A DNA stretch of 64,000 nt from Heterodontus francisci (GCF_036365525.1 NC_090404.1:27550149-27614148); one strand, 5' to 3'. Numbered from the stretch's first letter, positions 7,707 through 54,832 are shown. Program-made: numbers and translations. The notes: generated from the sequence alone by a model not told the origin.

Positions 7707-7749
7707 TAATTAATGTAAAGGAGCAAGCCATCTAATTATTTCCCTGGAG
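7707..7749 (+). promoter_or_regulatory. Putative homeodomain (TAATTA x2) + O/E(EBF)-like (TCCCTGGAG) promoter module, GPCR copy A
   Basis: TAATTA at 7707-7712 and 7733-7738; TCCCTGGAG at 7741-7749, ~64 nt before the ATG; positionally conserved in the paralogs. Confidence 0.45.
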
Positions 7750-7812
7750 TCTGACATAGGGATAAATGTGAAAATCTTCCAGTGCACAGTGCGTTCAAAG
7801 ATTCTGATAGAA

Positions 7813-7882
7813 ATGCACGGATCACCAAAAGGTCTGGTGTTTGCCATTTACTATCCTGTCCTTGCAGCTATCGGGGTTCCAG
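7813..7882 (+). CDS. GPR139-like class A GPCR copy A, coding exon 1 (MHGSPKGLVFAIYYPVLAAIGVP)
   Basis: ATG, then 70 nt ending CCAG|gtaaag (phase 1). Supplies the N-terminal half of TM1 and joins exon 2 as GVP-A-NL; near-identical exons at 48151 and 32004. Confidence 0.85.
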
Positions 7883-8399
7883 GTAAAGCATTGCAGTGAG
7901 TTATTAATTATGGGAATCATTGTTCAGTTATATAAATGCTCCCATTTATGTGTTGTGTTTCTCCAGGATGTGAATATTCTTTCTGTCAGTTAATGGCATT
8001 ATTTCTCATCTTTATGTAATATTCTTCCCCATTAAATGTGGTAATTAATTCCCTTTAACAGCATAATTTCTCCCCTTTAACAGGATAATTTATTCCCTTT
8101 AGTGAACAGCTTTCCCCTTTTAACTGATATCATTTCTCCCCTTTTAGAGAATCCTCTTTCCACTTTCATGATATTAATTATCCATTTTAACGATAAGCTC
8201 TTCCTTTTACAGACATAGTTTCTCATCATTAGTTATGCAATTTCTGCCCTTTAACAGTATAATTTCTCCACATCACTGGCACAGCACCTTAACATTACCA
8301 GCATAATTTCTCCTCTCTATAATACTATATTCTGTTGACCGGTAGAATTCCATCCCTTTAATTATATATTTTTTCTCACTTACCACTAACATCTCACGA

Positions 8400-10050
8400 A
8401 TTAAATGTAGTTCCATTGTGTTATTGACACTGAGAATATGGATGAATTATGACACTGTGACCAAAATATAAATTTATTTCCATTTGGTTATTGGCACTGT
8501 TACTGGGGGTGAATTATCATACTGCTATCATGGTGTAAAGGTAGCTGTATAGTGTTAATGTCACTGCTGCTGCGGGTGAAGTATCACAGTTATTAACATT
8601 GTTATTGTGGGTGAATTGTCACACTGTTATCACGGTGTAAATGTAGTTCTATTGTGCTATTGACACTGTTACTGTGGGTGAATTATCACACCGTTATCAT
8701 GGTGTAAATGTAATTGTATTGTGTTGTTGGTGCTGTTACTTTGAGAATTATCACACTGTTGTATCGGTTTAAATACAGCTCCATTGTGTAATAGACGTTG
8801 TTACAGTGGGTGGCTTGTCACATGTTATCACAGTGCTAATGTAGATGTACTGTGTTTTTGACACTGTTACCATGGTGTAAATGTAGTTCCATCATGTTAA
8901 AGACACACTTCTTCTTAGGCAATCCCTCCGGAATGAGGATGACATTCTTCCACTCCAGAGTTGCGGGTCCTTAGGTCACTGAATCGTCCAGTTCCAGATC
9001 TGCACACTCTGCCACAGATAGGGCAGTTAGTGTTTAATGAGGATGAATGGGATGCTCTTATTTCGAAATGCTTCTTCCACTGTTTGCGCTGGGTCACTGC
9101 CTGGGCATGTCGCCGTTGTTCGAACTGGATGACACCTTCGTGGATGCTTCTTCTCCCTTTTGAGCGGTCTCAGGCAAGAGATTCCCATGAATCAGTGGCG
9201 ATGTCACATTTTTTCAGGGAGGCTTTAAGGACATCCTTGTAGCGGTTCTTCTGTCCTCCTGGTAGCCTCTTGCCATGACAGAGCTCGGAGCAGAAAGTTA
9301 GTTTTGGGAGTCTTGTGTCAGACATGCGGACAATGTGGCCTATCCAACGTAACTGATTAACCATGGCCGGTGTCTGGATACTGGGGCTGTTGGGCTGAGA
9401 GAGGACACTGATATTAGAGCACCTGGAGTGTCAAACACTCTTTTCCACAGACAACAGAAGGCTGGGCTAGTACACTGGAGGCGATGCTAAGTTTCATCAT
9501 CGATGGCTGCCCTTTCTGAGAGAGGGCTCCCAAGGCATGAGAAGTGATTCATATTGTCCATTGTTTCGCCGTGGATCTTCAAAGATGGGAGGAAATATTG
9601 TACTGTGGGATCAGACTGGTAAAGGACTTTTGTCTTCCAGGTATTTAGCTTAAGGCCCATTCTTTCAAACACCTCAGTGAATGTATCGATGAGGGTTTGA
9701 AGCTGAGTGTGTGCATACCGCAAACATCATCAGCATACAGGAGTTCTATGATAGAGGTAATGGTGACCTTGGTTCTAACTGGAGGCAACTTGGTTAAATC
9801 ATTTCCTGCTCATCATATACAGTAGATCTACTCAGGCAGGGAGCTTCATAGAGATGAGGTGGAGTGTTGTGGTGAGGAAGATGGAAAAGAGCGTTGCTGC
9901 ATTTCCACAGCCTTGCTTGACCCTGTCACTGTCACTGTGCTGAATTATCAGACTGTTATCACACTGTAAATTGTGTTCCTGTCACATTACTGTAGGTGAA
10001 TTACCACACTCTTATCACGGTTTAAATATAGTTCTATTGTGTTATAGGCT
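8400..10050 (+). repeat. ~67-bp intronic minisatellite (interrupted by an RTE fragment)
   Basis: Repeats of ttattgacactgttactgtgggtgaattatcacactgttatcacggtgtaaatgtagttctattgtg. Confidence 0.8.
8905..9925 (-). mobile_element. 5'-truncated, degenerate RTE-clade LINE (different subfamily from 1640-6250)
   Basis: QLRWIGHIVRMSDTRLPK, C-terminal CPICGRVCRSGTGRFSDLR, ELLYADD region, GAA tail at the 3' end. Confidence 0.8.
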
Positions 10051-10450
10051 ACTCTTAGAAGAAGAGCTCAGAGTTATCATTGCGTCCTCTCACTTATTGT
10101 TAGCTGTTGTGTTATTTATCTCTTGAATATTTTCTGTACCTTTTTGCTGATGTATTACATTTCGGTCGTATTTGATGTTGCCGTGTTGGTTTCAACGTGT
10201 TTTAATGCCTTATTGTTCTGCATTAGTATTCATTGTATTATTTTACATTCTGATGACATTAGTCTGTTATATTCCTAATCTGAATGTTTGATTTAAACAC
10301 AGAAACAAGTGCTTGTAGCTTAAGCAACGGTTTTCAACTCAGGATCATGTGCCAAAGCGACTCTTTTTAGACAGAATCCTGTAAAACGGATGATTTCGTT
10401 GGGGCACGTGTGCACTCTTCATTTTCTTTCTCTCTCTCTCTCTGTTACAG

Positions 10451-11361
10451 CTAATTTGGCAGTGATTGTGATCCTGTCCCGAGGAAGATGTGGTCTCTCC
10501 AGATGTATCACTTACTATCTGATTTCCATGGCTGTAATGGATCTCCTACTTATTATCACTGCTGTGATATTAAACCGGATTGCTGCTATTTATTTCCCAT
10601 TCACTTTCTTGTCCATCACACCATTATGCAGCCTCCGTAATGCCCTCATCTATGCGATGATAGACGGTTCTGCCTGGTTAACGGTCACTTTCACTTTTGA
10701 TCGATTTGTGGCCATTTGCAGCCAGAAGCTGAAAATAAAATATTGCACCAAGAAAACGGCAACGCGGGTTATCGGAACAGTGTCTACGCTGAGCTTTCTA
10801 AAAAATATCTGCTTGTATTTTACTTATGAACCTTTGTACATAATTAGCAATGTACCCTGGTTCTGCGGCATAAAATTAATATATTATGTGTCACCTGCAT
10901 GGGCCGCATTTGACTGGATTCTTGTTAGTTTAACCCCTTGTCTCCCATTCATTTTGATTTTACTGCTCAATGCTCTGACTGTCAGACACATTCTAGTGGC
11001 CAGTAGAGCTCGCAGGAGACTCCGGGCCCACAGCAATGGAGAAAATAGGAGCGACCCAGAAATGGAGAAGCGGAGAAAGTCCATTATTTTACTCTTTGCC
11101 ATCTCGGGCAGTTTCATCCTCTTGTATTTACTGTATTTTATAACGATCCTCTATGTCCGAATTGCGAATGTCACTTATTATTCCGGTTCCAATTTTAGTG
11201 AATCAACATTTCTTCTGGAGGAAAATGGATATATGCTTCAGTTTTTGAGTTCCTGCATCAACCCATTTATTTATGCAGGAACCCAGAGAAAATTCACGCA
11301 GGAGTTAAAAAATGGGGTGAAATATCCATTGAATCTAATTGTTAAATTAGTTAAATCATGA
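10451..11361 (+). CDS. GPR139-like class A GPCR copy A, coding exon 2 (spliced protein 326 aa)
   Basis: Polypyrimidine tract + ttacag acceptor at 10450; seven hydrophobic segments; TM2 MAVMD, TM3 TFDRF, Cys pair (PLCS/PWFC), TM7 NPFIY; no stops. Confidence 0.92.
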
Positions 11362-14340: not shown

Positions 14341-14369
14341 TCATAACTGAAATTAATGACATATGGTAA

Positions 14370-15680: not shown

Positions 15681-15764
15681 TCCACTAGCTATTAAATTAT
15701 AAACCTTGGTATAAAAAACAACAACAAATAACCCTGTTACTACTAAGGTATACCACGATTTGAA

Positions 15765-16130: not shown

Positions 16131-16284
16131 GGGAGTGCTCAGAGGAGAAAAGTCAGCTACTCCGAAGGTGATGTATCCAAAATTCTTGAGTGGTGGTGTT
16201 GGAAGTGCTAGTAAGGGTGGAAATAGCATAGGCTCTGGCAAGTTTTTTTCAAGATTCCTTTTTAATACACGAAAGGTCACAGAG

Positions 16285-26565: not shown

Positions 26566-26569
26566 ATTT

Positions 26570-28189: not shown

Positions 28190-29158
28190 TCATTCAAACA
28201 ATTTAACGATCAGACTCAGTGGATATGTCACTCCATTCTTTAAATCCTCTCTGAATTTTCTCTGCGCCCCTGCACAAATAAATGGATTGAAGCAGGAATT
28301 CAAAAGCTGAAGCATATATCCGCTTTGGTCCAGAATAAAATTTGATTCATTGAAATTGGAACCGGAAAAATAACTAAATTTCGCAATTCGGACATAAAGG
28401 AAATTTATAAGAAGTACCGAATGAAGCTGCCCGAGACAGAGGAGAGTTAAACGTTGCACTTTCTCTACTTCTCCACCTATAGTTCACTCCGATTCAGTTT
28501 TTTTTTATTCATTCATGGGATGTGAGCGTCGCTTGCTAGGCCAGTATTTATTGCCTATCCCTAAAATTTCTGCAGTGCTGTGGACCCGGAGTCTCCTGCG
28601 AGCTCTGCTGGCTGCTAAAATGTGCCTGACCGTCAGAGCGTTGAGCAGTAAAATCAGAATGAATGGGAGACAAATGGTTAAAATCTGGTGAATACAGTCA
28701 TATGTCGTCAATGCTGGTGACGTATAAAATATCAATCTTATGCTGCAGAACCAGGGCGTATTGTTAATAATATTCAACGGTTCAAAAATAAAATACCGGA
28801 AGGTATTTATTAAACGGCTCAGTGTGCAGACCGTTCCTATCGCACGAGCTGCCATTTTCTCAGTGCAGTATTTTATTTTCCGCTCCTGGCAACAAATGGC
28901 CATAAATCAATCAAAGGTGAAAGCGACCGTTACGCAGACAGAAGTCTATGATCGCAAAGTTTAGGGCAATATGGAAACTGCATATCGGTGTGATGGATAG
29001 AAAATTGAGTGGGAAATAAATACCAGCAATCCGGTTTAATATCACAATGGTGATCATGACCAGGAGATCCGTCACTGCCATGGCCACCAGGTAGTAAGTG
29101 ATACAACTGGAGAGACCGCATCTTCCTCGGAACAGGATCACAATCACTGCCAGGTTAG
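28190..29158 (-). pseudogene. GPR139-like GPCR copy B, exon 2 (pseudogene)
   Basis: ANLAVIVILFRGRCGL... to NPFIC...KLFE*; frameshift near 28935; retroposon tail inserted at ~28497-28565; TM6 region disrupted. Confidence 0.9.
28497..28565 (-). mobile_element. Short LINE/SINE 3' tail inserted in the GPCR pseudogene
   Basis: Reverse complement ttagggataggcaataaatactggcctagcaagcgacgctcacatcccatgaatgaataaaaaaaaa. Confidence 0.75.
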
Positions 29159-30369
29159 CTGTAATAGAGACAGAGAGAGACTGAGAGAAAGAGCATGTGT
29201 GAATGAACAAGAACAGGAAAATTACTGCTCTGATTCCAAAAAAAAACATAGTTTTACAGAATCCTGTGCGAAATGCACAGCTTTGACACATGATACTGAG
29301 TGAAAAACTATCGCTCAACCTCTGGATACTTGCTTCTGTGATTAAAATAAGCTGGATTAAAAATCGGACGGATCATAACATCGGAATGTAAAATACTACA
29401 GTCAAACATAATGGAGAACAAGAAAGCATCAGGAACCCATCGAAATCCATACAGGAACATCAAACAGACAGGGAAAATAATATTAGTAACATATTCTAAA
29501 ATGTATTTTGGGGGGTAAATAATACAATAACCGGTGATAAAAGTGTAAAATAACAGGAAAGTAGCAAAAACAGATTATATCCTGCTGTGGATGAAAAAGG
29601 TCCTCACCCAACGAATTACTGTAAAATGATTCAGCAGTGGTAAATTCGACTGTTAGGTTGTTCGAAAAGATTTTCAGAGAGAACCAAATGGACAATAAGT
29701 GTTTCATCACTCAGTGGAGGGGGTGTTCTTGAACACGCAATGATAACTCAGACACCTTCTCCTGTTAATCCCCTGGGAAATTCCGTGTTGACCTGCACCA
29801 GCAGAACTGGCAGGCGATGAGGGCTCATTCAGAGAAAGGGCCCTCCTATAATACAACAATTCCTCAGTACTGCACTGAGCTGCCAGCTTAGATGATCGAC
29901 TTAGTCCAATCGCTGGTATTGAAATTAAAACTTTTTGACTCAGATGTGAGACATGCCACAGTTATATAAAATTTGGAGGAAAGACTGAAGACGTGAACAG
30001 TCTGGGACATTACCAACGGTTTTGAGCAGAAGGAACATTTTCACTCAGTAGTGATCATTGTAGCAGCAGTTCATGTGGAAGAGGAAAGCTGGGTTGAAGC
30101 AGTGAGAGTTAGAGACTGAGAGCAGAAACACTGAGCGCTGTGAGTTTAGTGTAAGCACAGGTTCATTCATAAAACGATGACTTGTTGCAATGCTTATATT
30201 TCTGTGAACAGCTCGTTGTCTAATAATCCCCTTCAACGAATTCACTCATTACATTCAGTGAGGAATTATTTATTTGTTGAATAATTTCAATCAGTGAATC
30301 ATTTATGAAAATCAGACAGCCGCTCTCAATGTCATTTCTACAGGAGAACTCAACGTATATTGTGGTGGA

Positions 30370-31490
30370 AGTGATAATTCACTTACAATAACAGTGTCAA
30401 TAATACATTTACACTGTGATAAAAGTGTGAGAATTCGCTTGCAGTAACACTGTCAGTTACATAACATAACTACATTTGCACTGCGATAGCAGTGATAGGT
30501 CACACACTGTGTCAATAATACAATAGAACTACATTTACACCCTTATTACAGTGTGATAATTCACCCAAAGTAACAGTGTCAATAAGACAATAAAGCTACA
30601 TTTGCACCGTGATAGCAGTGTGATAATTTACCCACAGTAAGAGTGTCAGTAAAACAGTAGAACTACGTTTACACCATGATAATAGTGTGATAATACAACC
30701 AATGGAATAGTATCTATAACACAATATAACTACGTTACACCGTGGTAGCAGTGTGATAATTCACCCACAGTTAGTGTCAATAACACAATAGAACTACATT
30801 TACACTGTATTAATCGTGTGATAATTCACTCAAAGTAACAGTATCAATGCAGCGTAATGACAGCGTCATAATTCACCCACAGTAAGTGTCAATAACACAA
30901 CAGAATCACATTCATGCCTGATAACTGCCTAGCAGTTGGCAGGAAAAAAGACAGAAGTGCAAGGGGAGAGCCAATTGTGTAACAACCCCGGTAGCCAATT
31001 TTATCTGCAGCACCAGTGGAAAAGTTTGTCACTCTAGAATTGGTCTTTATAGCCACTCCAGGTGCTGCTTCACAATCCACTGACCACCTCCAGGTGCTTA
31101 CCCATTGTCTCCCGAGACAAGGAGGCCAAAGAAGAAGAAAAAAGAAGAATTCACCCAAAGTAACAGCATAATGACAGCGTGATAATTCACCCACAGTAAG
31201 TGTCAATAACACAACAGATCCACATTCATACCTGATAACAGTGTGATAATTCCCCCAAAGTAAAAGTATCAAAACACAATAAAACTACATTTACAGCGTG
31301 ATAAAGGTGTGATAATTCACCCACAGTAACAGTGTTAATAACACAATAGAACTACATTTACACCGTGATAACAGTGTGGTAATTCACCTATTGTAACAGT
31401 GTCAATGACACAATAGGACTATATTTACATTATGATAACAGTGTGATAATTCACCCACATTAAGTGTCTGCAATACAATAGAACTGCAGT
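30370..31490 (-). repeat. ~67-bp intronic minisatellite of GPCR copy B
   Basis: aataacacaatagaactacatttacaccgtgataacagtgtgataattcacccacagtaacagtgtc repeats; reverse complement of the array at 8400. Confidence 0.9.
30926..31148 (+). mobile_element. RTE 3' fragment within the minisatellite
   Basis: Matches the RTE 3' end; (gaa)n tail. Confidence 0.85.
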
Positions 31491-31938
31491 TAGTCTGTGA
31501 AATGGCTCAAGTACAAGGGAGATATTATACAGTTAGAAGTACGAAATTATGCTTTCAAGCAATAGAATGGACACTGGTTAAAGGGAAGATGATACTGCTG
31601 AAGAGGGGAAATATTGCCACCAAAGTGGAAAGTAATGCTTGAAAGCAGGAGAAATTATGCTGTTAATATAAAGAAATTATACCGCTAATGACACTTCTGA
31701 AAGGGAGAAATTAAAGTATTAATGACTAAAATCATATTAGCAAATTTCCAAAAAAATTATATTAAAATGGAGAAATAGAACCTGCAAAGTAGAAAAAATA
31801 ATACTATAAATGAGGAGAAAGCATCCCATTGAAGGAGAAAAGGATATAATTAAGGTGCAGAAGTGCTAGTGATAAGTAAGAGGAGTGATAAAGCTAATCA
31901 ATGATTTCCGTAACTAATATCTAAGTACAGTACTTTAC

Positions 31939-32004
31939 CTGGAACCCCAAGAGCTGCATGAACGGGATAGTAAATGGCAAACACCAGATCTTCGATCCGT
32001 GCAT
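31939..32004 (-). pseudogene. GPR139-like GPCR copy B, exon 1 (net 4-nt deletion, frameshifted)
   Basis: atgcacggatcgaagatctggtg...ccag|gtaaag is 66 nt versus 70 nt in copies A and C. Confidence 0.85.
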
Positions 32005-32073: not shown

Positions 32074-32116
32074 CTCCAGGGAGATAATTAGATATTTTTA
32101 TATTTTACATTAATTG
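32074..32116 (-). promoter_or_regulatory. Putative homeodomain + O/E module, GPCR copy B
   Basis: Minus strand caattaatg...cTAATTAtcTCCCTGGAG. Confidence 0.4.
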
Positions 32117-32479
32117 CACGAATTGAAGCCAACAGATTAATGCAGCTATTGCCAGACTGGTGTTTTCGTTTTGATAGAATGGAATGTTTCTGAAGGGACC
32201 TGATATGGCTCTAAAGTAAGTAGCCAGAGAATACAATATGATCCTAGTTATAGTTACGATAATGAAAAGTGTAAGAGGCAGTTGCAATGGTGAAAATGAA
32301 TCCCCAGGTTTAAAAACTTTCATGCTGAATTAATTTCCCACATCACAAGGTATAAGTGACCAGAGATATTCTGGTCCTGAAGGAAATTGCAGTCAAGTTC
32401 TTGTTCCTGATCACGATTCAGCTCCAGTCCATGCGATCCTGGGTCTTATCCATGTGACTCCAAAGCCCTATAGATAGTA

Positions 32480-34200: not shown

Positions 34201-34239
34201 TGATTTGTTATTCCACTATCACTCCAAATTTCTATCCCT

Positions 34240-38974: not shown

Positions 38975-39258
38975 GGGCTGTTCATTTTACAGTCAATTGA
39001 CACCCTCTCTGTACTAATACTTTGTCTTTCACCACACCATTAACATACCGTTTGCCTTTGTTCCATGACCTTGTCCTATCAACACCTTCTCTTTTGTTAT
39101 CTCTTGTCCCACCTCCTCTTTACTTGCTTAAAACATTTTACATCTCTAATATTTGTCAGTTCTGATGAAGGGTCATTGACCTGAAACGTTAACTCCGCTT
39201 CTCTCTGCACGGATGATGCCAGATCTGCTGAGTATTACCAGCATTTCTTGTTTTAATT
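38975..39258 (+). mobile_element. Penelope terminal repeat fragment replacing the 5' part of the V exon
   Basis: Homologous to 26680-27000 and to the reverse complement of 57230-57530. Confidence 0.8.
39158..39194 (+). ncRNA. Minimal type I hammerhead ribozyme motif (Penelope-associated)
   Basis: Stem I agtt/aact; core CUGAUGA; stem II gggtc-att-gacct; GAAAC-GUU with palindromic stem III (aacgtt). Confidence 0.7.
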
Positions 39259-39493
39259 ACAACTTTAGACTGCATCTATTTCACTACCAAGAGTTCCTAC
39301 TGTGGGTCCGGCAATATGCCGACGCAGAACCAGAGATTCTACTTCGCGAGTTTTCAGGTGGTTACCAAATTAAAGCAGATTTTGATCGAAGCCATTTTTC
39401 CTCTGCCCTGGGCACCTCGAATGCCATATTCACCTTAACAGTGTCCAAACTGCGACCCGTTGACGCGGCCAGGTATTACTGTGCATTGAGTCT
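39259..39493 (+). pseudogene. T-cell receptor alpha/delta-type variable (V) gene segment, truncated and frameshifted
   Basis: TLDC(1st Cys, 39271)IYFTTKSSY / frameshift / LW(39303)VRQYADAEPEILL...FTLTVSKLRPVDAARYYC(39480)ALS, directly followed by an RSS. Confidence 0.85.
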
Positions 39494-39532
39494 CACAGCG
39501 GGAGAAACCACTTAGACCCTCGTACAATAACC
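39494..39532 (+). other. V(D)J recombination signal sequence, 23-bp spacer
   Basis: Heptamer CACAGCG (39494-39500), exactly 23-nt spacer, nonamer ACAATAACC (39524-39532); one mismatch each to CACAGTG and ACAAAAACC. Confidence 0.9.
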
Positions 39533-40349: not shown

Positions 40350-43300
40350 AAACCATTCAGAAGACAGATCAGGCAGAAGCCGGATCAGTCAGAAAGCGGA
40401 TCACACAGAAGCTGAAACTGTTAGAAGTCAAAGCAGTCAGAAACTGAATCAGATAGAAACGAAATCAGACAGAAGCCGGATCAGACAGAATCTGTATCAG
40501 TCATAAGCCGGATCAGTCAGAATCTGGATCAGACAGATCTGTAACAGTCAAAAGCCGGATCAGACAGAAGTCAGATCAGATAGAAGCTGGATCAGACAGA
40601 TCTGTAACAGTCAGAAGCTGGATCAGTCAGAAGCCGGATCAGACAGAAGCTGGATCAGACAGAAACCGGATCAGTCAGAAGCTGGATCAGTCAGACGCCG
40701 GATCAGTCAGAAGCTGGATCTGTCAGAATCTGGATCAGTCAAAATCTGGATCAGACAGAAACCAGATCAGCCAGAATCCAGATCAGTCAGAAGGTGGATC
40801 AATCAGAGGCTGGATCAGTCATAATCCAGATCAGTCAAAATCCGGATCAGACAGAAACCGGTTCAGTCAGAATCTGGATCCCACAAAATCTGTATCAGTC
40901 ATAAGCTGAATCAGTCAGAAACTAGATCAGTCAGAAGCCAGATCAATCAGAAGCTGGATCAGTCAGAATTCCATCAGGCAAAATCCGGATCAGTCAGAAG
41001 CTGGATCAATCAGTGGCTGGATCAGTCAAAATCTGGATCAATCAGAAGCTGGATCAATCAGAAACTGGATCAGTCAGAAGCCAGATCAATCAGAGGCTGG
41101 ATCAGTCAGAATCTGGATCAGTCAGAATTCCATCAGGCAAAATCCGGATCAGTCAGAAGCCAGATCAATCAGTGGCTGGATCAGTCAAAATCTGGATCAA
41201 TCAGAGGCTGGATCAGTCAGAATCTGGATCAGTCATAAGCCGGATCAGTCAGAATCTGGATCAGACAGATCTGTAACAGTCAAAAGCCGGATCAGACAGA
41301 AGTCAGATCAGATAGAAGCCGGATCAGACAGATCTGTAACAGTCAGAAGCCGGATCAGTCAGAAGCCAGATCAGACAGAAGCTGGATCAGACAGAAACCG
41401 GATCAGTCAGAAGCTGGATCAGTCAGACGCCGGATCAGTCAGAAGCTGGATCTGTCAGAATCTGGATCAGTCAAAATCTGGATCAGACAGAAACCGGATC
41501 AGTCAGAATCCAGATCAGTCAGAAGGTGGATCAATCAGAGGCTGGATCAGTCATAATCCAGATCAGTCAAAATCCGGAACAGACAGAAACCGGTTCAGTC
41601 AGAATCTGTATCCGACAAAATCTGTATCAGTCATAAGCTGAATCAGTCAGAAACTAGATCAGTCAGAAGCCAGATCAATCAGAAGCTGGATCAGTCAGAA
41701 TTCCATCAGGTAAAATCCGGATCAGTCAGAAGCTGGATCAATCAGTGGCTGGATCAGTCAAAATCTGGATCAATCAGAAGCTGGATCAATCAGAGGCTGG
41801 ATCAATCAGAGGCTGGATCAGTCAGAATCCAGATCAGTCAAACTCTGGATCAATCAGAACCTGGATCAATCAGAAACTGGATCAGTCAGAAGCCGGATCA
41901 ATCAGAACCTGGATCAATCAGAAACTGGATCAGTCAGAAGCCGGATCAATCAGAACCTGGATCAATCAGAAACTGGATCAGTCAGAAGCCGGATCAATCA
42001 GAGGCTGGATCAGTCAGAAGCCAGATCAATCAGAGGCTGGATCAGTCAGAATCTGGATCAGTCAGAATTCCATCAGGCAAAATCCGGATCAGTCAGAAGC
42101 CAGATCAATCAGTGGCTGGATCAGTCAAAATCTGGATCAATCAGAGGCTGGATCAGTCAGAATCTGGATCAGACAGATCTGTAAAAGTCAAAAGCCGGAT
42201 CAGACAGAAGTCAGATCAGATAGAAGCTGGATCAGACAGATCTGTAACAGTCAGAAGCCGGATCAGTCAGAAGCCGGATCAGACAGAAGCTGGATCAGAC
42301 AGAAACCGGATCAGTCAGAAGCCGGATCAGTCAGACGCCGGATCAGTCAGAAGCTGGATCTGTCAGAATCTGGATCAGTCAAAATCTGGATCAGACAGAA
42401 ACCGGATCAGTCAGAATCCAGATCAGTCAGAAGGTGGATCAATCAGAGGCTGGATCAGTCATAATCCAGATCAGTCAAAATCCGGATCAGACAGAAACCG
42501 GTTCAGTCAGAATCTGGATCCGACAAAATCTGTATCAGTCATAAGCTGAATCAGTCAGAAACTAGATCAGTCAGAAGCCAGATCAGTCAGAAGCTGGATC
42601 AATCAGAAACTGGATCAGTCAGAGGCCAGATCAATCAGAGGCTGGATCAGTCAGAATCTGGATCAGTCAGAATCTGGATCAGTCAGAATCCAGATCAGTC
42701 AAACTCTGGATCAATCAGAACCTGGATCAATCAGAAGCTGGATCAGTCAGAATTCCATCAGGCAAAATCCGGATCAGTCAGAAGCTGGATCAATCAGAGG
42801 CTGGATCAGTCAGAAGCCAGATCAATCAGAGGCTGGATCAGTCAGAATCTGGATCAGTCAGAATTCCATCAGGCAAAATCCGGATCAGTCAGAAGCTGGA
42901 TCAATCAGAGGCTGGATCAGTCAGAAGCCAGATCAATCAGAGGCTGGATCAGTCAGAATCTGGATCAGTCAGAATTCCATCAGGCAAAATCCGGATCAGT
43001 CAGAAGCCAGATCAATCAGTGGCTGGATCAGTCAAAATCTGGATCAATCAGAGGCTGGATCAGTCAGAATCTGGATCAGTCAAACTCTGGATCAATCAGA
43101 ATCTGGATCAATCAGAAACTGGATCAGTCCGAAGCTGGATCAATCAGAGGCTGGATCAGTCAGAATCTGGATCAGTCACAATCCGGACCAATCAGGAGCT
43201 GGATCAATCAGAAACTGGATCAGTCAGAAGCCAGATCAATCAGAGGCTGGATCAGTCAGAATCTGGATCAGTCAGAATCCGGATCAGTCAGAATTCGGAT

Positions 43301-43930
43301 CAGTCAAAATCTGGATCAATCAGAAACTGGATCAGTCAGAAGCCGAATCAATCAGAGGCTGGATCAGTCCGAATCCGGATCAGTCAAAATCCGGATCAGT
43401 CAGAAACGAGATCAGACAGAAGCCAGATCAGTCAGAAGCCAGATCAGAAAGAAGCTGGATCAGACAGAAACCAGATCAGTCAGAAGCCGGATCAATCAGA
43501 AACCAGATCAGTCAGAAGCTGGATCGGACAGAGGCTGGAACAGTCAGAATACAGATCAGTCAGAAGCCGGATCAATCAGAAACTGTATCAGTCAGAAGCT
43601 GGATCAGACAAGAAACCAGATCAGTCAGAAGCCGAATCAATCAGAAGCTGGAACAGTCAGAATCCAGATCAGTCAGAAGCCGGATCAGTCAGAATCCAGA
43701 TCAGTCAGAAGCCGGATCAATCAGAAGCCAGATCAGTCAGAATCCGGATCAGTCAGAAGCCAGATCAGTCAGAATCCGGATCGGTCAGAAGCCAGATCAG
43801 TCAGAATCCGGATCAGTCAGAAACCAGATCAGACAGCAGCTGAATCAATCAGAAGCCGAATCAAACAGAAACTGGATCGGAAGAAGCAGGATCAGTCAGA
43901 AGCCGGATCAGTCAAAATCTGGGTCAGACA
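40350..43930 (+). repeat. 16-bp satellite (GGATCAGTCAGAAGCY), ~220 units, with higher-order blocks
   Basis: Continuous tandem array; a diagnostic variant block (agatctgtaa.agtcaaaagccgg) recurs at ~40541, 41273 and 42181. Confidence 0.95.
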
Positions 43931-46500: not shown

Positions 46501-46589
46501 ATCTCAGAGGGATTTGGAATCAGGTGCACATGACCCAGACTGGAGCTGAATAGTGATCAGGAGCATGAACTTGGCTGCTGTTGCTTTCA

Positions 46590-47766: not shown

Positions 47767-48038
47767 GCTTTCAGGACCTGAATATTCCTGGTCAGTTAGA
47801 CCATGTTCTCTGAGAGCACTTAACTCAGCATTAATCCTGGGAAAAACTGGTATAGGGTTCACTTTCACCATTGAAACCACTTATTAAACTTTTCATTCTC
47901 ATAACTGTAACTAGGATCTATTGTAATATCCACGTATTTCACTTTAGAGCCGTTTCAGATCACTTGAAAAACATTCCATTCCATCAAAACAAAAACATGA
48001 GTCCGGTGGCTGCACTAATCTGTTTGTTTCAATTCGTG

Positions 48039-48081
48039 TAATTAATGTAAAACATGAAACTCTCCAGTTATCCCCCTAGAG
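48039..48081 (+). promoter_or_regulatory. Putative homeodomain + O/E module, GPCR copy C (variant)
   Basis: TAATTA at 48039-48044; CAGTTAtcCCCCTAGAG at 48065-48081. Confidence 0.35.
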
Positions 48082-48150
48082 ACTGATATCAGGTATAAAT
48101 ATGAAAAGCTTTGAATGCAGTTCGGAGCGTGTTCAGAGCTTCTGACAGAA

Positions 48151-48220
48151 ATGCACGGGTCAGCAAAAGGTCTGTTGTTTGCCATTTACTATCCCGTCCT
48201 TGCAGCTATCGGGATTCCAG
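48151..48220 (+). CDS. GPR139-like class A GPCR copy C, coding exon 1 (MHGSAKGLLFAIYYPVLAAIGIP)
   Basis: ATG, 70 nt, CCAG|gtaaaa donor, phase 1. Confidence 0.85.
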
Positions 48221-48815
48221 GTAAAATATTGTAGTTATTAGTTATGGGATCATTCATTAGCATGGTCACTGCTCTTATTTACCACTAGCATTTCTCCACG
48301 TTATGGATATGCAATCCCCCCTTTCATGTGATAATTTCTCCATTTTAATGGGAAAAAATTTTCCCTCCATTTGGTATAATTTCTCCTTTTATACGATATC
48401 GTTTTTTCCACTTTAAAGGTATTATTTCCTCAATTTACTGATATAATCTATCGTCATAAATGATATAATTTCGCCTTTTTAGAAGTGTAATTTCTCCCCA
48501 TTGCTGGTATCATTTTTTTTTTTACATTGCCATTCTAATTTCTTCCACTGTACAGTATCATTTCCGACTTTGGCAGCACAATTTCTCCTCTTCAGCGGTA
48601 TAATTTTCCCCTTAACCAGTATAATTTCTCCTGCTTAAATGTACAATTTAGTGCTGCGCACAGAATAATTTAAGCCCTTAACTTGAGCCATTTCACAGTG
48701 CAAATGTATTTATATTGTGTCACTGACACTGTTTACTGTGGGTGAACTATCACACTGTTATCATAGTGTACATTTCAACGTACTGTGTTGTTGACACTGT
48801 TACTGTGGGTGAATT

Positions 48816-51800
48816 CTTTGGCAGCCTTGTCTCGAGAGACAATGGGTAAGCGCCTGGAGGTTGTCAGTGGTTTGTGCAGCAGCGCCTGGAGTGGCTATAA
48901 AGGCCAATTTTAGAGTGACAGACTATTCCACAGGTGCTGCAGATAAGATTGGTTGTCGGGACTGTTACACAGTTGGCTCTCTCCTTCCGCTTCTGTCTTT
49001 TTTCCTGCCAACTGGTAACTCTCTTTGACTCGCCATGCTTTAGCCCCGCCTTTATGGTTGCCCGCCAGCTCTGGCGATCACTGGCAACTGACTCCCACGA
49101 CTTGTGATCAATGTCACAGGACTTCATGTCATGTTTGCAGACGTCTTTAAAGTGGAGACATGGATGGTCGGTGGGTCTGGTACCAGTGACGAGCTTGCTG
49201 TACAATGTGTCCTTGGGGATCCTGCCATCTTCCATGTGGCTCACATGGCCAAGCCATCTCAGGCGCCGCTGGCTTAGTAAGGTGTATATGCTGGGGATGT
49301 TGGCCACCTCGAGGACTTCTGCGTTGGAGTTATGTCCTGCCATCTGATGCCAAGGATTCTCTGGAGGCAGTAAAGATGGAATGAATTGAGACGTCTCTCT
49401 TGGCTGACGTACGTTGTCCAGGCCTCACTGCCATAGAGCAAGGTACTGAGGACACAGGCTTGATACACTTGGACTTTTGTGTTCTGTGTCAGTGCGCCAT
49501 TTTCCCACACTCTCTTGGCCAGTCTGGACATAGCAGAGGAAGCCTTTCCCATGCGCGTGTTTAATTCTGCATCGAGAGACAGGTTACTGGTGATAGTTGA
49601 GCCTAGGTAGGTGAACTCTTGAACCACTTCCAGAGTGTGGTCGCCGATATTGCTGGATGGGGCATTTCTGACGTCCTGTCCCATGATGTTCATTTTCTTG
49701 AGGCTGATGGTTAGGCCAAATTCATTGCAGGCAGCCGCAAACCTGTCGATGAGTCTCTGCAGACACTCGTCAGTGTGAGATGTTATTGCAGCATCATCAG
49801 CAAAGAGGAGTTCCCTGATGAGTACTTTCCGTACTTTGGTCTTCGCTTTTAGACGGGCAAGGTTGAACAACCTGCCACCTGATCTTGTGCGGAGGAAAAT
49901 TCCTTCTTCTGAAGACTTGAACGCATGTGAGAGCAGCAGGGAGAAGAAGATCCCAAACAGTGTAGGTACGAGAACACAGCCCTGTTTCACGCCACTCAGG
50001 ATTGGAAAGGGGTCTGATGAGGCGCCACTATGCTGAATTGTGCCTTTCATATTGTCATGGAATGAGGTGATGATACTTAGTAGCTTTGGTGGGTATCCAA
50101 TCTTTTCTACTAGTCTGAAGAGACCACGTCTGCTGATGAGGTCAAAGGCTTTGGTGAGATTAATGAAAGCAACACAGAGGGGCATCTGTTGTTCATGGCA
50201 TTTCTCCTGTAGCTGGTGAAGGGAGAACAACATGTCAATGGTGGATCTCTTTGCTCGAAAGCCACACTGTGCCTCAGGATAGACAAGCTCAGCCACCTTC
50301 TGGAGCCTGTTTAAGGTGACACAAGCGAAGACTTTCCCCACTATGCTGAGCAGGGAGATTCCACGGTAGTTGTTGCAGTCACCGCGGTCACCCTTTTTCT
50401 TATAGAGGGTTTTGATATTGGCATCGCGCATGTCCTGTGGTACTGCACCCTCGTCCCAGCACAGGCAAAGCAGTTCATGCAGTGCTGAAAGTATATCAGG
50501 CTTGGCACTCTTGATGATTTCAGGGGTAATGCCGTCCTTCCCAGGGGCTTTTCCGCTGGCTAGAAAATCAATGGCATCATTGAGTTCCGATTTTGTTGGC
50601 TGTACGTCCAGCTCATCCATGACTGGCAGAGACAGGCTGCATTGAGGGTGGTCTCAGTGACAACATTCTCCCTGGAGTACAGTTCTAGGTAGTGTTCCAC
50701 CCAATGGTCCATTTGCTTACGTTGGTCAGTGATTGCGTCCCCTGATTTAGATTTGAGGGGGGCAATCTTCTTGATGGTTAGCCCAAAAGCTCTCTTAATG
50801 CTTTCACACATTCCTCTGATATTTCCTGTGTCAGAGACCAGCTCAGTATGACTGCATAGGTGTTGCCAGTAGTCATTTGCACAGCACCTGGCTGTTCTTT
50901 GTGCCGCGCTTCTGGCAGCTTTAAATGCTACAGATGTTAACTCGCTGGGGGCTTTCTTGTAGTTTAGCAGGGCAATGCACTTAGCGGCTATGACAGGTTC
51001 CAGCTCTTCAATGTGAGATTGAAACCAGTCTGCATTCCTCTTCAAACGATTACCATAGGTGGTCATTGCTGGGTCATAGATTTAGACTCTGACGTGGGCC
51101 CACTTGGTCTCTGCATCCCCTGTGGGAGTGTTTTGAAGGGCTTTTTCATGTGAATTTAGAAACTTGCGTAACAGCTATGGATGAGAAATTCTGCTCGTGT
51201 TGATGCACAGGCAGCCCTTCTGCTTGTTTGATTTGAGTCTAACTTCGCTCCACACCAGGGAGTGGTCGGTGTCACAGTCCGCACTTTGGAAGCTGCGTGT
51301 GATTTGAACACTGTTTAAAGAGGCTCACCTTGTAACAATGAGGTCCAGCTGGTGCCAATGACGTGATGTTGGGTGCCTCCAAGAAACCTGGTGACAGGGT
51401 TTAGTGTGAAAGAACGAGTTGGTGATGCAGAGGTTATGATAGGTACACAACTCAAGCTGTCTCTGTCCATTCTCATTCATTCTTCCAATGCCAAAGCGCC
51501 CAAGGCAGGAGGGCCATGAGTCATGGTCGGCCCCAACCCTGGCATTAAAGTCCCCCAGCAGGAATAGGTGTTCGGTATTGGGGATGCTACTAGTGATATT
51601 ATGGAGTCCCTCATAGAACTGGTCTATAGCTTCAGGTGGGGAGCAGAGTGTTGGAGCATAGATGCTGAGTAGGTGTACTGGACCAGAGGCAGTGAGCAGT
51701 CGGATGGACAGTATGCGTTCTGAGCCATTTGAGGGTGGCTCTATCATGCTGAGCAAAGAGTTTCTGATGGTGAAGCCCACTCCGTGCTGTCTTGGTTCTT

Positions 51801-52366
51801 CAGGATCCCAACCCTGCCAGAAGAAGGTGTAGTCTTGCTCTCTTAGAGATCCGCTCGCAGGGAGGCGTGTCTCCTGAAGTGCTGCAATGTCTACATTGAG
51901 TCTACTGAGCTCGTTGTTAATGATGGCGGTCTTCCGAGAATCGTTGATTTGTGTAAGGTCTTCCAACAGGCCAGGACACATAGTTCTGATGTTCCAGCTT
52001 GCAAAACGAAGGGCTGGCATCTTCTTTCCTTTTTTGGTCGTGCTGTTTGGTGCGGTGTTACAGTCCACTTGTCTGGCAATGACCCTGAGCTCCAAGCACC
52101 CATTGAAGCAGGTGAACTGCAGCGGGACAGAACCTTACTGACCGGGGGTGCATGGTTTGAGGTGGGCGGTAGCTGTCCAGTGAGACGTGATGACCTCTCC
52201 CACCGACAAAGGCAGTCCATGGCACCCAGTCTCTACGTGAATTGAGCTGGACTTATAACCCGTAACTGCTGCCTGCCGTGTTGATTTGGTCGCTGTGAGG
52301 TGACTATGGAGTGACCTCTCCATGACGCATGCCTGGGCGTATGTATGGAGGTTGTGAGTGACTTGC
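48816..52366 (-). mobile_element. Degenerate near full-length RTE LINE in the intron of GPCR copy C
   Basis: ORF pieces 51325-52095, 50560-51066, 49274-50620 and 48864-49343 are colinear with the intact RTE ORF; several frameshifts; flanked by 67-bp minisatellite units. Confidence 0.92.
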
Positions 52367-53524
52367 CACACGGTTATCACAGTGTAAATGGAGATCTATT
52401 ATGTTAATGGCATTGAGAGCGGCTGTCTGCTTTTCCAAAGGATTCACCGATTGAAATTATTCAACAATTAAATAATTCCTGACTGAATTTAAGGAGTGAA
52501 TTCATTGAAGGAACATTATTAGGCATCGGGTTGATAATAGAAATATAAGCAATGTGATAAGTGGCCGTTTTATGAATGAATCTGTACTTACCCTAAATTC
52601 ACAGTGCTCAGTGTTTCTGTTCTCAGTCTTTAATGCGCACTGCTTCAGCCTGGCTCTCCTCTTCCAACAGTCGCTGCTACTGACTGTTCTGCAGTGACCA
52701 CTATTATGTCCGAATGTTCCTTCTGCTCTAAGCTCCTGACAATGTCCTGGACTGTTCCCACCTTCAAATTTTTTTCCATAATTTCTATAACTGGTGGTAT
52801 CTCTCGCATCTGCGTCAAAAAAGTTTAATTTCAACACCCACTATAGGACTAAGCTGATCATCTCTGCCGACAGCGCAGTGCAGTGCTGATGAACTGCTGC
52901 CCTGTAGGAGCAAGCTTTCTCTGAATGAGACCTCACCACCTACCACTTCCGCAGGCATAGGTGCACAACGGAGATCCCACGGACTAACAGGGGAAATGGT
53001 CAGAGTTATTAGTGCATCTTCAAAAACATCCCCTCTGCAAAGTGTGAAAATGTTAATTGTCTGTTTAGTTCTCTCTGCTTGAGGATCCTTTCGAAAAAGT
53101 TGACAGTCGAGTTTTCCAACAGTGAATCATTTTACAATAATTTGTTAGGGTGAGGGTCTTTTAGATCCTCAGCAGAATATAATCCATTTTAAATGCAAGT
53201 TTTTACTACTTTCCTTTTAGTTTCCACTTTTATTGTCAGTAATTGTATTGTTTACTCTCTTAAATATCTTCCATAATATATTACTTATGTTATTTTCTTC
53301 CTGTCTGTTTGATGTTCCCATTTTGGTTCAATGAGTTTGTAATGCCTTTTTGTTCTCCATTCTGTTTGATTGTATTATTTTACATTCCGATGTTATTGAT
53401 CTCTCTGAATTTTCATGCAGGTGATTATTTTAAACACAGAAACAACTGCCCAGATGTTAAGCGATACTTTTCCATCCAGTATCAGCTGTCAAAGTTGTGA
53501 ATTTCACACATAACTCTGTGAAAC

Positions 53525-53820
53525 GGGCGGCACAGTGGTGCAGTGGTTAGCACTGCAGCCTCACAGCTCTAGTGACCCGGGTTCACTTCTGGGTACTGCC
53601 TGTGCAGAGTTTGCAAGTTCTCCCTGTGATCCACGTGGGTTCAGCCAGGTGCTCCGGTTTCCTCCCAAAGCCAAAAGACTTGCAAGTGATAGGTAAATTG
53701 GCCATTGTAAATTGCCCCTAGTGTAGGTAGGTGGTAGGGATTACTGTATGGTGAGTATAAATGGGTGGCTGTTGGTTGGCATAGACTCGAGGGGCTTGTT
53801 TCAGTGCTGTATCTCTAAAT
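53525..53820 (+). mobile_element. tRNA-derived V-SINE (HE1-like)
   Basis: Box A tggtgcagtgg, box B ggttcacttct, V-domain gtttgca..ttctccc...ggtgctccggtttcctccca; absent from the paralogous introns. Confidence 0.85.
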
Positions 53821-53924
53821 AAAACAGATGATTTTGTTGGGAGTCGGACCAGTAATAGTCCTGTTCTTGCTCGCTGACACATGTACACTGTTCCGCTTTC
53901 TCTTAGCCTCTTTCTCTATTACAG

Positions 53925-54832
53925 CTAACCTGGCAGTGATTGTGATCCTGTCTCGAGGAAGATGCGGTCTCTCCAGATGTATCACTTACTATCTGATGTC
54001 CATGGCAGTGACAGATCTCCTGGTTATGATCACTGTTGTGATATTAAACCAGATTGCTAGTATTTATTTCCCAGACACTTTTCTGTCCATCACACCTGTA
54101 TGCAGTCTCCGTAATGCCCTAAGCTTTGCGATCATAGACAATTCTGTCTGGTTAACGGTCGCTTTCACCTTTGATCGATTTATAGCCATTTGTTGCCAGA
54201 AGCTGAAAATAAAATACTGCACAGAGAAAACGGCGGCGTGGGTTATAGGAACGGTCTGCACACAGAGCTGTTTAAAAAATACTTTCCGGTATTTTATAAT
54301 GGAACCTTTGCTTATAATTGACAATATACCCTGGTTCTGCATCATAAAATTAACATTTTATACGTCACCTGCATGGGTCGCATATGACTGGATTTATTCC
54401 CTTTTAACCCCTTGTCTCCCATTCATTCTGATTTTACTGTTCAATGCTCTGACAGTCAGACACATTCTAGTGGCCAGTAAAGCCCGCAGGAGACTCACAG
54501 CCCACAGCAATGGAAAGAATCAGAGTGACCCAGAGATGGAGAAACGGAAAAAGTCCATCGTTTTACTCTTCTGCATCTCGTGCAGTTTCATCCTGTTATA
54601 TTTGGTAGTTCTTATAAATTTCCTTTTTATCCGAATTGCGAAATTAAGTTACTTTTCTGGTTCCAATTTCAATAAATCAAATGTTATTCTGGACCAAAGC
54701 GGATATATGCTTCTGCTTGTGAGCTCCTGCATCAATCCATTTATTTATGCAGGGACCCAGAGAAAATTCAGAGAGGAGTTAAAGAATGGAGTGAAATATC
54801 CACTGAGTCTAATTGCTAAAATGTTTCAGTGA
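53925..54832 (+). CDS. GPR139-like class A GPCR copy C, coding exon 2 (spliced protein 325 aa)
   Basis: ttacag acceptor at 53924; MAVTD, TFDRF, PVCS/PWFC, NPFIY; open to the TGA at 54832. Confidence 0.92.

What the first reader, a model, noticed from the sequence alone, without database searches (positions are those of the whole stretch)
7707..54832. Orphan GPR139-like GPCR cluster with olfactory-receptor-style homeodomain + O/E promoter motif: candidate chemoreceptor family
Seen: three compact paralogous receptors (two intact, one pseudogene, mixed orientation) with an N-terminus of only ~8 aa before TM1. About 65-70 nt before the ATG, copy A has TAATTA-tt-TCCCTGGAG (7733-7749), copy B has TAATTA-tc-TCCCTGGAG (32090-32074) and copy C has CAGTTA-tc-CCCCTAGAG (48065-48081). 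A second (t/c)AATTAATG lies ~26 nt further upstream in all three. Established: closely spaced homeodomain (Lhx2/Emx2) and O/E (EBF) sites characterise vertebrate olfactory receptor promoters and enhancers, and cartilaginous fish have very few canonical ORs. Inference: this birth-and-death family could be an unrecognised chemosensory repertoire. EBF is also a B-cell factor, so an immune receptor role is the alternative.
Basis: partly seen in the sequence, partly recalled or inferred. Interest (0 to 1): 0.85.

Follow-up and report, generated by a model that had tools for sequence, protein, structure and literature searches.

The report
Shark-expanded GPR139-like receptor gene cluster
Three neighbouring horn-shark genes (two intact, one dead) belong to a very large, fast-diversifying receptor family that looks like a sensory or surveillance repertoire. 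The olfactory-style promoter motif is present but is not shown to be conserved by selection, and no expression data could be found.

Summary
The window (Heterodontus francisci) holds three two-exon paralogs of a class A GPCR. A and C are intact and B is a pseudogene with five lesions. The motifs lie exactly where stated. Copy A is already RefSeq XP_067869848.1 ("probable GPR139").

The family is large and repertoire-like:
- 130 clusters at 50% identity score E<=1e-30.
- It occurs in sharks and rays, with species-specific clades.
- Variability is concentrated in the extracellular, pocket-facing half (p=2e-6).
- A vs C dN/dS is 0.43 overall and about 2 around ECL2/TM5.

It is only remotely GPR139-like. 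It forms its own clade, apart from a conserved single-copy GPR139-like gene that sharks also keep.

The promoter argument is weak:
- The whole gene unit is duplicated.
- TAATTA-nn-TCCCTGGAG is intact in A and in dead B but degenerate in intact C.
- 151 of 471 noncoding windows are at least as conserved.
- Other species' contigs align only over exon 1.
- Side-by-side HD/O-E motifs mark mouse OR enhancers, not OR promoters.
- The distal AATTAATGTAAA box and a TATA box are better kept.

No RNA run holds the gene. A chemosensory role is plausible but untested. Other first-stage notes of this scan record the same family elsewhere in this genome.

The parts
7706..7721 (+). Copy A distal AT-rich homeodomain/POU-type box GTGTAATTAATGTAAA. 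The core 7708-7719 is invariant in A, B and C.
   Evidence: it is the longest invariant noncoding run in the three-way alignment; paralog contigs align best over 7680-7723.
7733..7749 (+).
   Evidence: exact match; 12/17 invariant across the three copies, which is unremarkable.
7761..7767 (+). Copy A TATA-like box GATAAAT. Most paralogs have T at 7761, giving TATAAAT. The predicted TSS is about 7790-7795 (inference).
   Evidence: 7761 G>T in 9 contigs (98.5 of 112.6 depth); loose-end consensus CAGGTATAAATGTG; alignments resume at 7795.
7813..7882 (+). Copy A exon 1 (70 nt): ATG, 7-residue N-terminus, most of TM1. Phase-1 donor GT at 7883.
   Evidence: It is the most widely conserved segment in all four runs laid.
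10451..11361 (+). Copy A exon 2 (rest of the receptor plus stop). It equals XP_067869848.1 residues 24-326.
32074..32119 (-). Copy B promoter boxes: distal GTGCAATTAATGTAAA at 32119-32104 and proximal TAATTATCTCCCTGGAG at 32090-32074.
31939..32004 (-). Copy B exon 1 remnant (66 nt). A 4-nt deletion shifts the frame.
28190..29158 (-). Copy B exon 2 remnant, a pseudogene. It has a 2-nt deletion, TGA at the DRF arginine, a ~73-nt insertion and a 10-nt deletion.
48036..48081 (+). Copy C promoter boxes: distal GTGTAATTAATGTAAA at 48036-48051 (intact) and proximal CAGTTA-tc-CCCCTAGAG at 48065-48081 (4 mismatches to A/B).
48094..48100 (+). Copy C canonical TATA box TATAAAT, 57 nt before the ATG.
48151..48220 (+). 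Copy C exon 1 (intact, 70 nt).
53925..54832 (+). Copy C exon 2 (intact, 302 codons plus stop). It is 74% identical to copy A at the protein level.
48864..52095 (-). Degraded LINE (endonuclease + RT ORF fragments) inserted in copy C's intron.
   Evidence: ORFs homologous to the intact LINE at 1709-4900..

Best explanation
These are three members (A and C intact, B dead) of a very large, rapidly diversifying clade of class A GPCRs expanded in elasmobranchs. The clade is distantly related to GPR139.

Gene and protein anatomy:
- Each gene is a compact two-exon unit behind its own AT-rich, TATA-type proximal promoter (inferred).
- The protein has almost no N-terminus and a short tail.
- It keeps N1.50, D2.50, the C3.25-ECL2 disulphide cysteines, DRF and NPxxY. 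The intracellular face is conserved.
- The extracellular, pocket-facing half varies strongly between paralogs.

Most likely reading: a ligand-diverse receptor repertoire that signals through one shared G-protein interface. My favoured role is chemosensory in the broad sense (olfactory, taste or solitary chemosensory cells). This role is inferred, not shown.

The HD + O/E-like motif is part of the duplicated promoter. It may be a working site in some copies, but it is not shown to be under constraint. The distal AATTAATGTAAA box and the TATA box are the better candidates for conserved promoter elements.
For: - Identity: Pfam 7tm_1. Copy A equals the RefSeq H. francisci protein.
- Family size: 2413 hits at E<=1e-5, and the best 120 are all elasmobranch. 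130 clusters at 50% identity reach E<=1e-30.
- Range: sharks plus skate and rays.
- Species-specific clades.
- The expanded clade sits behind a 99% branch, apart from a conserved single-copy GPR139-like group that includes shark orthologs.
- A pseudogene lies among intact copies.
- Entropy is 0.98 in the extracellular half against 0.63 in the intracellular half, p=2.4e-6. High-entropy positions number 29/149 against 8/142. They include 3.29, 3.32, ECL2 just after the Cys, 5.42-5.43 and 6.53-6.55.
- A vs C dN/dS is 0.43 overall and about 2.0 in the ECL2/TM5 window.
- Helices fit a 7TM protein starting at residue 8.
- Promoter: TATA at the right distance and kept in paralogs; an AT-rich promoter (36-38% GC against 44% for the window); the distal box is invariant in all three copies.
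Against: - There are no expression data of any kind. No RNA run holds the exon, and three small RNA-like runs from the assembly's own sample hold none of its words.
- The catshark sensory atlas found no GPCR among the 50 most specific 'brain & olfactory epithelium' genes (PMC11979771). This is weak evidence, because sparse receptors score low in bulk tissue.
- The proximal motif evolves at about the neutral rate in the three copies.
- The distal box's 12-nt invariant run is not significant on its own (my estimate P~0.17 for 450 columns).
- Other first-stage notes of this scan (unverified) say the family is interleaved with TCR V arrays, which suits an immune reading equally well.
- The AF2 model has low confidence (pLDDT 50), so pocket mapping rests on Ballesteros-Weinstein landmarks, not on a structure.
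Confidence: 0.5

Rival explanations
1. Olfactory receptor family in the strict sense. The genes are expressed one per olfactory sensory neuron, and Lhx2/Emx2 and Ebf bind the HD + O/E motif.
For: - HD and O/E-like sites, an AT-rich promoter and a TATA box all match the published OR promoter features (PMC12547500).
- The A/B motif closely resembles the Sfaktiria Greek-Island composite: TAATTGATCTCCAAGGAA against TAATTATCTCCCTGGAG.
- Sharks have very few canonical ORs (PMC11979771).
- The family is large and pocket-variable.
- Another first-stage note (s1-872369) reports an OR-style promoter at a paralog on another piece of this genome (unverified).
Against: - The O/E half is lost in intact copy C and kept in dead copy B. 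Conservation is not above neutral.
- In other species only exon 1 aligns. The one cross-species contig that keeps 7650-7731 has diverged over 7731-7809.
- The composite arrangement marks enhancers, not promoters.
- The spacing is one base shorter than in the Sfaktiria example, and a 2-bp insertion already impaired recognition by the paper's Lhx2-Ebf fusion protein in EMSA competition.
- TCCCTGGAG is a poor match to the palindromic TCCCNNGGGA and occurs 6 times in the window.
- There is no olfactory RNA evidence.
Confidence: 0.2
2. Immune-cell receptor repertoire. The family is expressed in lymphocytes or other leukocytes. EBF and POU/Oct-type factors use the O/E-like and ATGTAAA-type boxes. 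Co-location with antigen-receptor loci reflects shared regulation.
For: - A V-set segment with a 23-RSS lies between copies B and C.
- Several first-stage notes report the family interleaved with TCR V arrays, an IgH VDJ and an MHC class I gene elsewhere in this genome (unverified).
- EBF is a B-lineage factor.
- AATGTAAA is one or two mismatches from the octamer ATGCAAAT (my reading).
- Chemokine receptors are among the profile's weaker PDB hits.
Against: - Linkage of fast-evolving families is common without shared function. Mammalian OR clusters flank the TCRA and MHC loci (my knowledge).
- Only one V segment, apparently 5'-truncated, lies in this window, and it is outside the duplicated GPCR unit.
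- Three RNA-like runs from the assembly's sample hold none of the exon's words (tissue unknown).
- A 7-residue N-terminus is unlike chemokine-type receptors.
Confidence: 0.15
3. Largely neutral co-amplification. The GPCR genes were carried along in segmental duplications of repeat-rich, antigen-receptor-rich regions. Most copies have little specialised function, and the promoter motif is simply inherited sequence.
For: - The whole unit (promoter, intron, flanks) is duplicated at 72-80% identity, and coding sequence is only a little higher at 81-87%.
- There is a pseudogene in the cluster.
- The introns carry LINEs and a 67-nt satellite.
- The motif evolves at the neutral rate.
Against: - dN/dS is 0.43 with strongly conserved intracellular motifs.
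- Dozens of intact 325-326 aa models exist, across lineages separated for more than 250 My.
- Variability is patterned rather than uniform.
Confidence: 0.1

Closest known systems
Human GPR139 (PDB 7VUG and others)
   Same: It is the best-scoring solved receptor for the family profile (E 2.4e-12). It is clearly the best for the family's coelacanth relative (1.8e-18, with the next hit at 2e-10). Both are class A receptors of modest length. NCBI's automatic name for the shark genes is 'probable GPR139'.
   Different: - For the single shark sequence GPR139 does not reach E<=1e-6, and NMUR2 is the top hit.
- TRHR scores almost the same as GPR139 against the profile.
- The shark proteins lack CWxP, have DRF in place of DRY, and have a 7-residue N-terminus.
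- The shark family has hundreds of copies, against one GPR139.
- GPR139's aromatic amino-acid agonists (my knowledge) are an attractive lead for a fish chemoreceptor, but this was not tested.
Conserved single-copy 'GPR139-like' gene of non-mammalian jawed vertebrates (coelacanth XP_005988539.1 group)
   Same: It is the nearest conserved relative: 34% identity, E 2e-49. It shares the YYP..IG.P|AN start of TM1 and the FDRF/ERF and helix-8 motifs.
   Different: It has one copy per genome from sharks to turtles, at 50-66% identity across more than 400 My. The expanded clade is separated from it by a long branch with 99% support, and sharks keep both.
Vertebrate chemoreceptor repertoires built from class A GPCRs (ORs, TAARs)
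   Same: - Tandem clusters in mixed orientation.
- Birth-and-death evolution with pseudogenes.
- Species-specific clades.
- Length about 320 aa with short termini.
- Variability in TM3, ECL2, TM5 and TM6.
- AT-rich promoters with HD, O/E-like and TATA elements.
   Different: There is no sequence kinship beyond class A. The coding region is split by an intron in TM1, whereas most OR coding regions are intronless (my knowledge). Expression in sensory neurons is not shown, and the O/E site is not conserved.
Greek-Island Lhx2/Ebf composite motif (Monahan et al. 2017, PMC5608512)
   Same: A homeodomain core sits immediately beside a degenerate YTCCNNGGAG-type O/E site. The example is Sfaktiria, TAATTGATCTCCAAGGAA.
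   Different: In the shark genes it sits about 45-60 nt upstream of a predicted TSS, not in an intergenic enhancer. The spacing is one base shorter. It is present in only two of the three copies.

Membership tests
Class A (rhodopsin-type) GPCR | 7tm_1 domain with N1.50, D2.50, the C3.25/ECL2 cysteine pair, (D/E)R(Y/F) and NPxxY | tested here: met
   Pfam PF00001 at E 1.8e-22 (A) and 9.9e-21 (C). The motifs are visible in P0121. Seven helices are predicted. CWxP is absent.
GPR139/GPR142 subfamily | GPR139 is clearly the closest characterised receptor | tested here: inconclusive
   Profile against PDB: GPR139 2.4e-12, TRHR 6.1e-12. With a single sequence NMUR2 is the best hit and GPR139 is absent at 1e-6. 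The coelacanth relative links the family to GPR139.
GPR139/GPR142 subfamily | Orthology, or nesting inside the conserved vertebrate GPR139-type clade | tested here: not met
   The expanded clade is separated by a 99% branch from the conserved single-copy group that holds shark orthologs. Identity to that group is 34%.
GPR139/GPR142 subfamily | Pocket residues that bind aromatic amino acids or surrogate agonists | not tested
   I could not number the human residues reliably from tool output. The positions that align with the usual class A pocket are the most variable ones in the family.
OR-type promoter (HD + O/E) | AT-rich proximal promoter with homeodomain sites and an O/E site within a few hundred bp of the TSS (PMC12547500) | tested here: inconclusive
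   GC is 36-38% against 44% for the window. HD cores are present in all three copies. The O/E-like TCCCTGGAG is in A and B only, and it is a degenerate match to TCCCNNGGGA. The TSS is predicted, not mapped.
   Proximal motif: 12/17 invariant, with 151 of 471 windows at least as good. It is degenerate in intact copy C. The contig of run X20 has diverged over it. The distal box is the top-ranked window but is not significant alone.
OR-type promoter (HD + O/E) | Sparse, one-receptor-per-neuron expression in olfactory epithelium | not testable with these tools
   No RNA run holds the gene.
Birth-and-death sensory/surveillance receptor repertoire | Large lineage-specific expansion in tandem clusters with pseudogenes | tested here: met
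   In addition, 559 contigs of one genomic run match the exon 1 region at >=80%.
Birth-and-death sensory/surveillance receptor repertoire | Diversification focused on the ligand-facing half, with a conserved signalling face | tested here: met
   Entropy 0.98 against 0.63, p=2.4e-6. The local dN/dS window is about 2 at ECL2/TM5, against 0.15-0.5 in most other windows (up to 0.78 at ECL1/TM3) (one pair only).
Greek-Island composite enhancer motif | Stereotyped HD-O/E juxtaposition in an intergenic enhancer | tested here: inconclusive
   The sequence resembles the Sfaktiria probe but with one base less spacing. The location is promoter-proximal, not intergenic. The motif matrix itself was not available to score.

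The most novel reading that the evidence does not exclude
The elasmobranch-expanded GPR139-related clade is the 'missing' main chemoreceptor repertoire of sharks and rays. On this reading hundreds of pocket-diverse receptors, possibly tuned to amino acids and related small molecules, are expressed sparsely in olfactory or other chemosensory cells. Their compact HD/O-E/TATA promoters would then be an independent, or very ancient, use of the OR-type regulatory logic.
Probability: 0.2. Interest if true: 0.9.

Novelty: new member of a known kind. Interest (0 to 1): 0.55.

Why it matters
Sharks are famed for their sense of smell, yet they have only a handful of canonical ORs, TAARs and V1Rs, and V2Rs are the only sizeable known family. 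A class A family with hundreds of copies and a hypervariable pocket sits in public annotation under a misleading automatic name. I could not find it in the searchable literature. It is an obvious candidate to test with existing shark tissue atlases. If it is chemosensory, it would change the picture of early vertebrate olfaction. If it is immune, its interleaving with TCR V arrays would be interesting in a different way. The promoter motif should not be used as evidence yet.

Tried and rejected
I therefore could not fetch promoters of paralogs from H. francisci or other sharks. This was the planned decisive test.
- A metagenome scan for the exon 1 17-mer gave 120 loci. All were chance matches of at most 21 nt, with no homology to the promoter, and I did not pursue them.
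- The look-up of sequencing runs found no RNA holder.
- Read laying at 80% likeness gave a paralog pile-up. The runs are contigs, depth is not a copy number, 103 variant rows were hidden, and copy A has private indels at 7757 and 7780 that break alignments. It therefore cannot rank the motif against its neighbours. I used only what is robust: exon 1 is far better kept than the promoter, other species align at exon 1 only, and T at 7761 restores a TATA box.
- The only strict palindromic O/E site in the window (TCCCCTGGGA, 29769-29778, in B's intron) is not conserved in A or C. I treat it as chance.
- The AF2 model had pLDDT 50, so I ran no fold search and used only its helix boundaries.
- Literature searches for GPR139 with shark, cartilaginous, expansion or olfactory terms found nothing relevant. 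The catshark atlas has no supplements held as text.
- NCBIfam gave no hit, as expected for a library built for bacteria and archaea.

Full report
**What is there**

The window holds three paralogous receptor genes. Each has a 70-nt first coding exon: ATG, seven residues, and most of TM1, ending in phase 1 at a GT donor. A second exon carries the rest of the protein.
- Copy A: exon 1 at 7813-7882, exon 2 at 10451-11361 (+).
- Copy C: exon 1 at 48151-48220, exon 2 at 53925-54832 (+), with a degraded LINE in the intron.
- Copy B: exon 1 at 32004-31939, exon 2 at 29158-28190 (-).

Copy B is dead. It has a 4-nt deletion in exon 1, a 2-nt deletion in TM3, CGA>TGA at the DRF arginine, a ~73-nt insertion and a 10-nt deletion. 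Both intact proteins match Pfam 7tm_1.

Searches used exon 2 by reference or database proteins. Copy A's exon 2 is 100% identical to residues 24-326 of XP_067869848.1, 'probable G-protein coupled receptor 139 [Heterodontus francisci]', on a 59.49-Mb chromosome. That model's N-terminus is the exon 1 translation. The window is therefore horn shark, and the gene is already in RefSeq.

**The motifs**

- Proximal: A and B have TAATTA-n2-TCCCTGGAG. C has CAGTTA-tc-CCCCTAGAG.
- Distal: a (T/C)AATTAATG lies 26 nt upstream in all three, with the 12-mer AATTAATGTAAA invariant.
It is TATAAAT in C (48094-48100) and GATAAAT in A (7761-7767).

In the pile-up of paralog contigs nearly all copies have T at 7761, which restores TATAAAT. 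Alignments resume at about 7795. This fits a TSS near 7790-7795 and a 5'UTR of about 20 nt. That TSS is an inference, because no RNA evidence was available.

**Is the motif more than inherited sequence?**

The whole gene unit is duplicated, including promoter, intron and flanks. Noncoding identity is 72-80% and coding identity 81-87%.

In the three-way alignment:
- The proximal HD+O/E window has 12 of 17 invariant columns.
- 151 of 471 noncoding 17-nt windows are at least as conserved.
- All four mismatches lie in the intact copy C, while the pseudogene B is perfect.
- The distal box is the longest invariant noncoding run and the top-ranked 12-mer. I estimate a run of 12 in about 450 columns at 56% invariance has roughly a 0.17 chance, so it is suggestive only.

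Laying contigs of four public runs at >=80% likeness showed the following:
- Exon 1 is by far the most widely kept segment.
- In two other species' genomic runs only about 7792-7897 aligns.
- One contig of a fourth organism keeps 7650-7731 but has diverged, at equal length, over 7731-7809, the part that holds the proximal motif.
- The pile-up cannot rank the motif against its neighbours. Depths are summed over contigs, 103 variant rows were hidden, and copy A's private indels break alignments.

The planned decisive test was to fetch promoters of many paralogs. A metagenome scan for exon 1 gave only chance hits.

**How the motif compares with OR regulation**

The literature agrees that OR promoters are AT-rich and carry O/E, HD, MEF2A and TBP motifs (PMC12547500). 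The shark promoters fit that loose description, at 36-38% GC against 44% for the window.

The side-by-side composite is a different matter. It is enriched in the Greek-Island enhancers and is 'not found in promoters' (PMC5608512 and PMC12547500). The published Sfaktiria composite probe reads TAATTGATCTCCAAGGAA on its reverse strand. Shark B reads TAATTATCTCCCTGGAG. The resemblance is close, but the ATCTCC block sits one base nearer the TAATT core. The paper reports that a 2-bp insertion already impairs recognition by its Lhx2-Ebf fusion protein in EMSA competition.

TCCCTGGAG is a degenerate O/E site and occurs six times in the window, twice inside LINE copies. The only strict palindromic O/E site, in B's intron, is not conserved. 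Other homeodomain or POU factors could equally bind TAATTAATG-type boxes (my knowledge, untested).

**What the family is**

- Copy A's exon 2 finds 2413 proteins at E<=1e-5. The best 120 (E<1e-129) are all elasmobranch, and 76 of them are H. francisci clusters at 90% identity.
- A full-library profile search finds 130 clusters at 50% identity with E<=1e-30.
- Named members include sharks of several orders, a skate (Leucoraja) and rays (Hypanus, Narcine). More distant relatives occur in salamanders.
- Species labels cluster strongly on the tree. One clade of 25 sequences is H. francisci only.

Relation to GPR139:
- Against solved structures the family profile ranks GPR139 first, but barely: 2.4e-12 against 6.1e-12 for TRHR.
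- A single shark sequence does not reach GPR139 at 1e-6.
- A coelacanth relative bridges the gap. It is 34% identical to copy A and hits GPR139 at 1.8e-18, with the next hit at 2e-10.
- That coelacanth protein belongs to a conserved, apparently single-copy group present from sharks to turtles.
- The expanded clade is separated from that group by a long branch with 99% support.

The family is therefore GPR139-related but is neither GPR139 nor its ortholog.

**How it probably works**

Across 83 canonical-length members, Shannon entropy is concentrated in the extracellular half. The mean is 0.98 against 0.63, p=2.4e-6, and high-entropy positions number 29/149 against 8/142.

By Ballesteros-Weinstein landmarks the most variable positions are:
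- ECL1;
- 3.24-3.35, including 3.29 and 3.32;
- the top of TM4;
- ECL2 just after the conserved Cys;
- 5.42-5.43;
- 6.53-6.55;
- ECL3 and the top of TM7.

ICL1, DRF, ICL3, the inner part of TM6 and NPxxY are nearly invariant.

A vs C gives dN/dS 0.43 overall. The window at ECL2/TM5 is about 2.0, against 0.15-0.5 in most other windows (up to 0.78 at ECL1/TM3) (a single pair, so indicative only). The AF2 model is of low confidence (pLDDT 50), but its helices match the 7TM layout, starting at residue 8.

This is the signature of a repertoire that varies what it binds and keeps how it signals. The very short termini suggest ligands that bind in the transmembrane pocket.

Which cells use the receptors is unknown:
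- No RNA run holds the exon.
- Three small RNA-like runs from the assembly's own sample hold none of its words.
- Run and tissue names are coded.
- The catshark sensory atlas reports no GPCR among its top olfactory-enriched genes (PMC11979771). That is weak negative evidence for sparsely expressed receptors.

**Context**

A V-set segment with a good 23-RSS lies between B and C (heptamer CACAGCG at 39494, nonamer ACAATAACC). Other first-stage notes of this scan report the family interleaved with TCR V arrays, an IgH VDJ and an MHC class I gene elsewhere in the genome. I did not verify those notes. This keeps an immune reading alive, but linkage of fast-evolving families is common without shared function.

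**Verdict**

The family is real, large, repertoire-like and, as far as I could search, undescribed. The composite form is not what characterises OR promoters.

I put about 0.5 on the general reading (a ligand-diverse sensory or surveillance repertoire, with chemosensory favoured), about 0.2 on strict olfactory use, and about 0.15 on an immune role.

Noticed in passing
window 39213-39532 (+): An Ig V-set segment (Pfam V-set, E 1e-5) ends in YYCALS and is followed by a 23-RSS (CACAGCG, 23 nt, ACAATAACC). It looks 5'-truncated: there is no leader or FR1, and TE-like sequence lies upstream. It is the only RSS found in the window.
   Followed up: partly
window 1709-4900 (-): An apparently intact LINE ORF of 1063 aa with endonuclease and reverse transcriptase domains. 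It may be an active element. A degraded copy (87% identity at the edges) sits in copy C's intron at 48864-52095.
   Followed up: partly
window 57695-60134 (-): Two overlapping long ORFs. One has a weak GIY-YIG match (E 7e-4, below Pfam's cut-off) and a CIRCSQCGLLYIGET motif. This suggests a Penelope-like retroelement.
   Followed up: partly
window 40357-43914: A 16-nt tandem array (TCAGAAGCCGGATCAG) of about 223 copies at 77% matches. It creates long spurious ORFs between copies B and C.
   Followed up: no
window 8487-8870; 30404-31492; 48693-48815: The same 67-nt tandem repeat occupies the intron of all three GPCR copies. It is therefore older than the duplications and is a handy marker of the duplication unit.
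   Followed up: partly
window 7688-7696 (A), homologous in C: TGTTTGTTT lies just upstream of the distal box. Its reverse, ACAAACA, fits the forkhead core RYAAAYA. It is kept in intact A and C but mutated in pseudogene B (TGTTGGCTT). This may be chance.
   Followed up: no
proteins P0302, P0400: RefSeq models of the conserved single-copy GPR139-like gene are named 'transmembrane protein 183A isoform' in Stegostoma and Hyla. The likely cause is a read-through fusion of neighbouring genes in the annotation.
   Followed up: no
window 29769-29778: This is the only strict palindromic O/E consensus in the window (TCCCCTGGGA). It lies in copy B's intron and is not conserved in A or C.
   Followed up: yes
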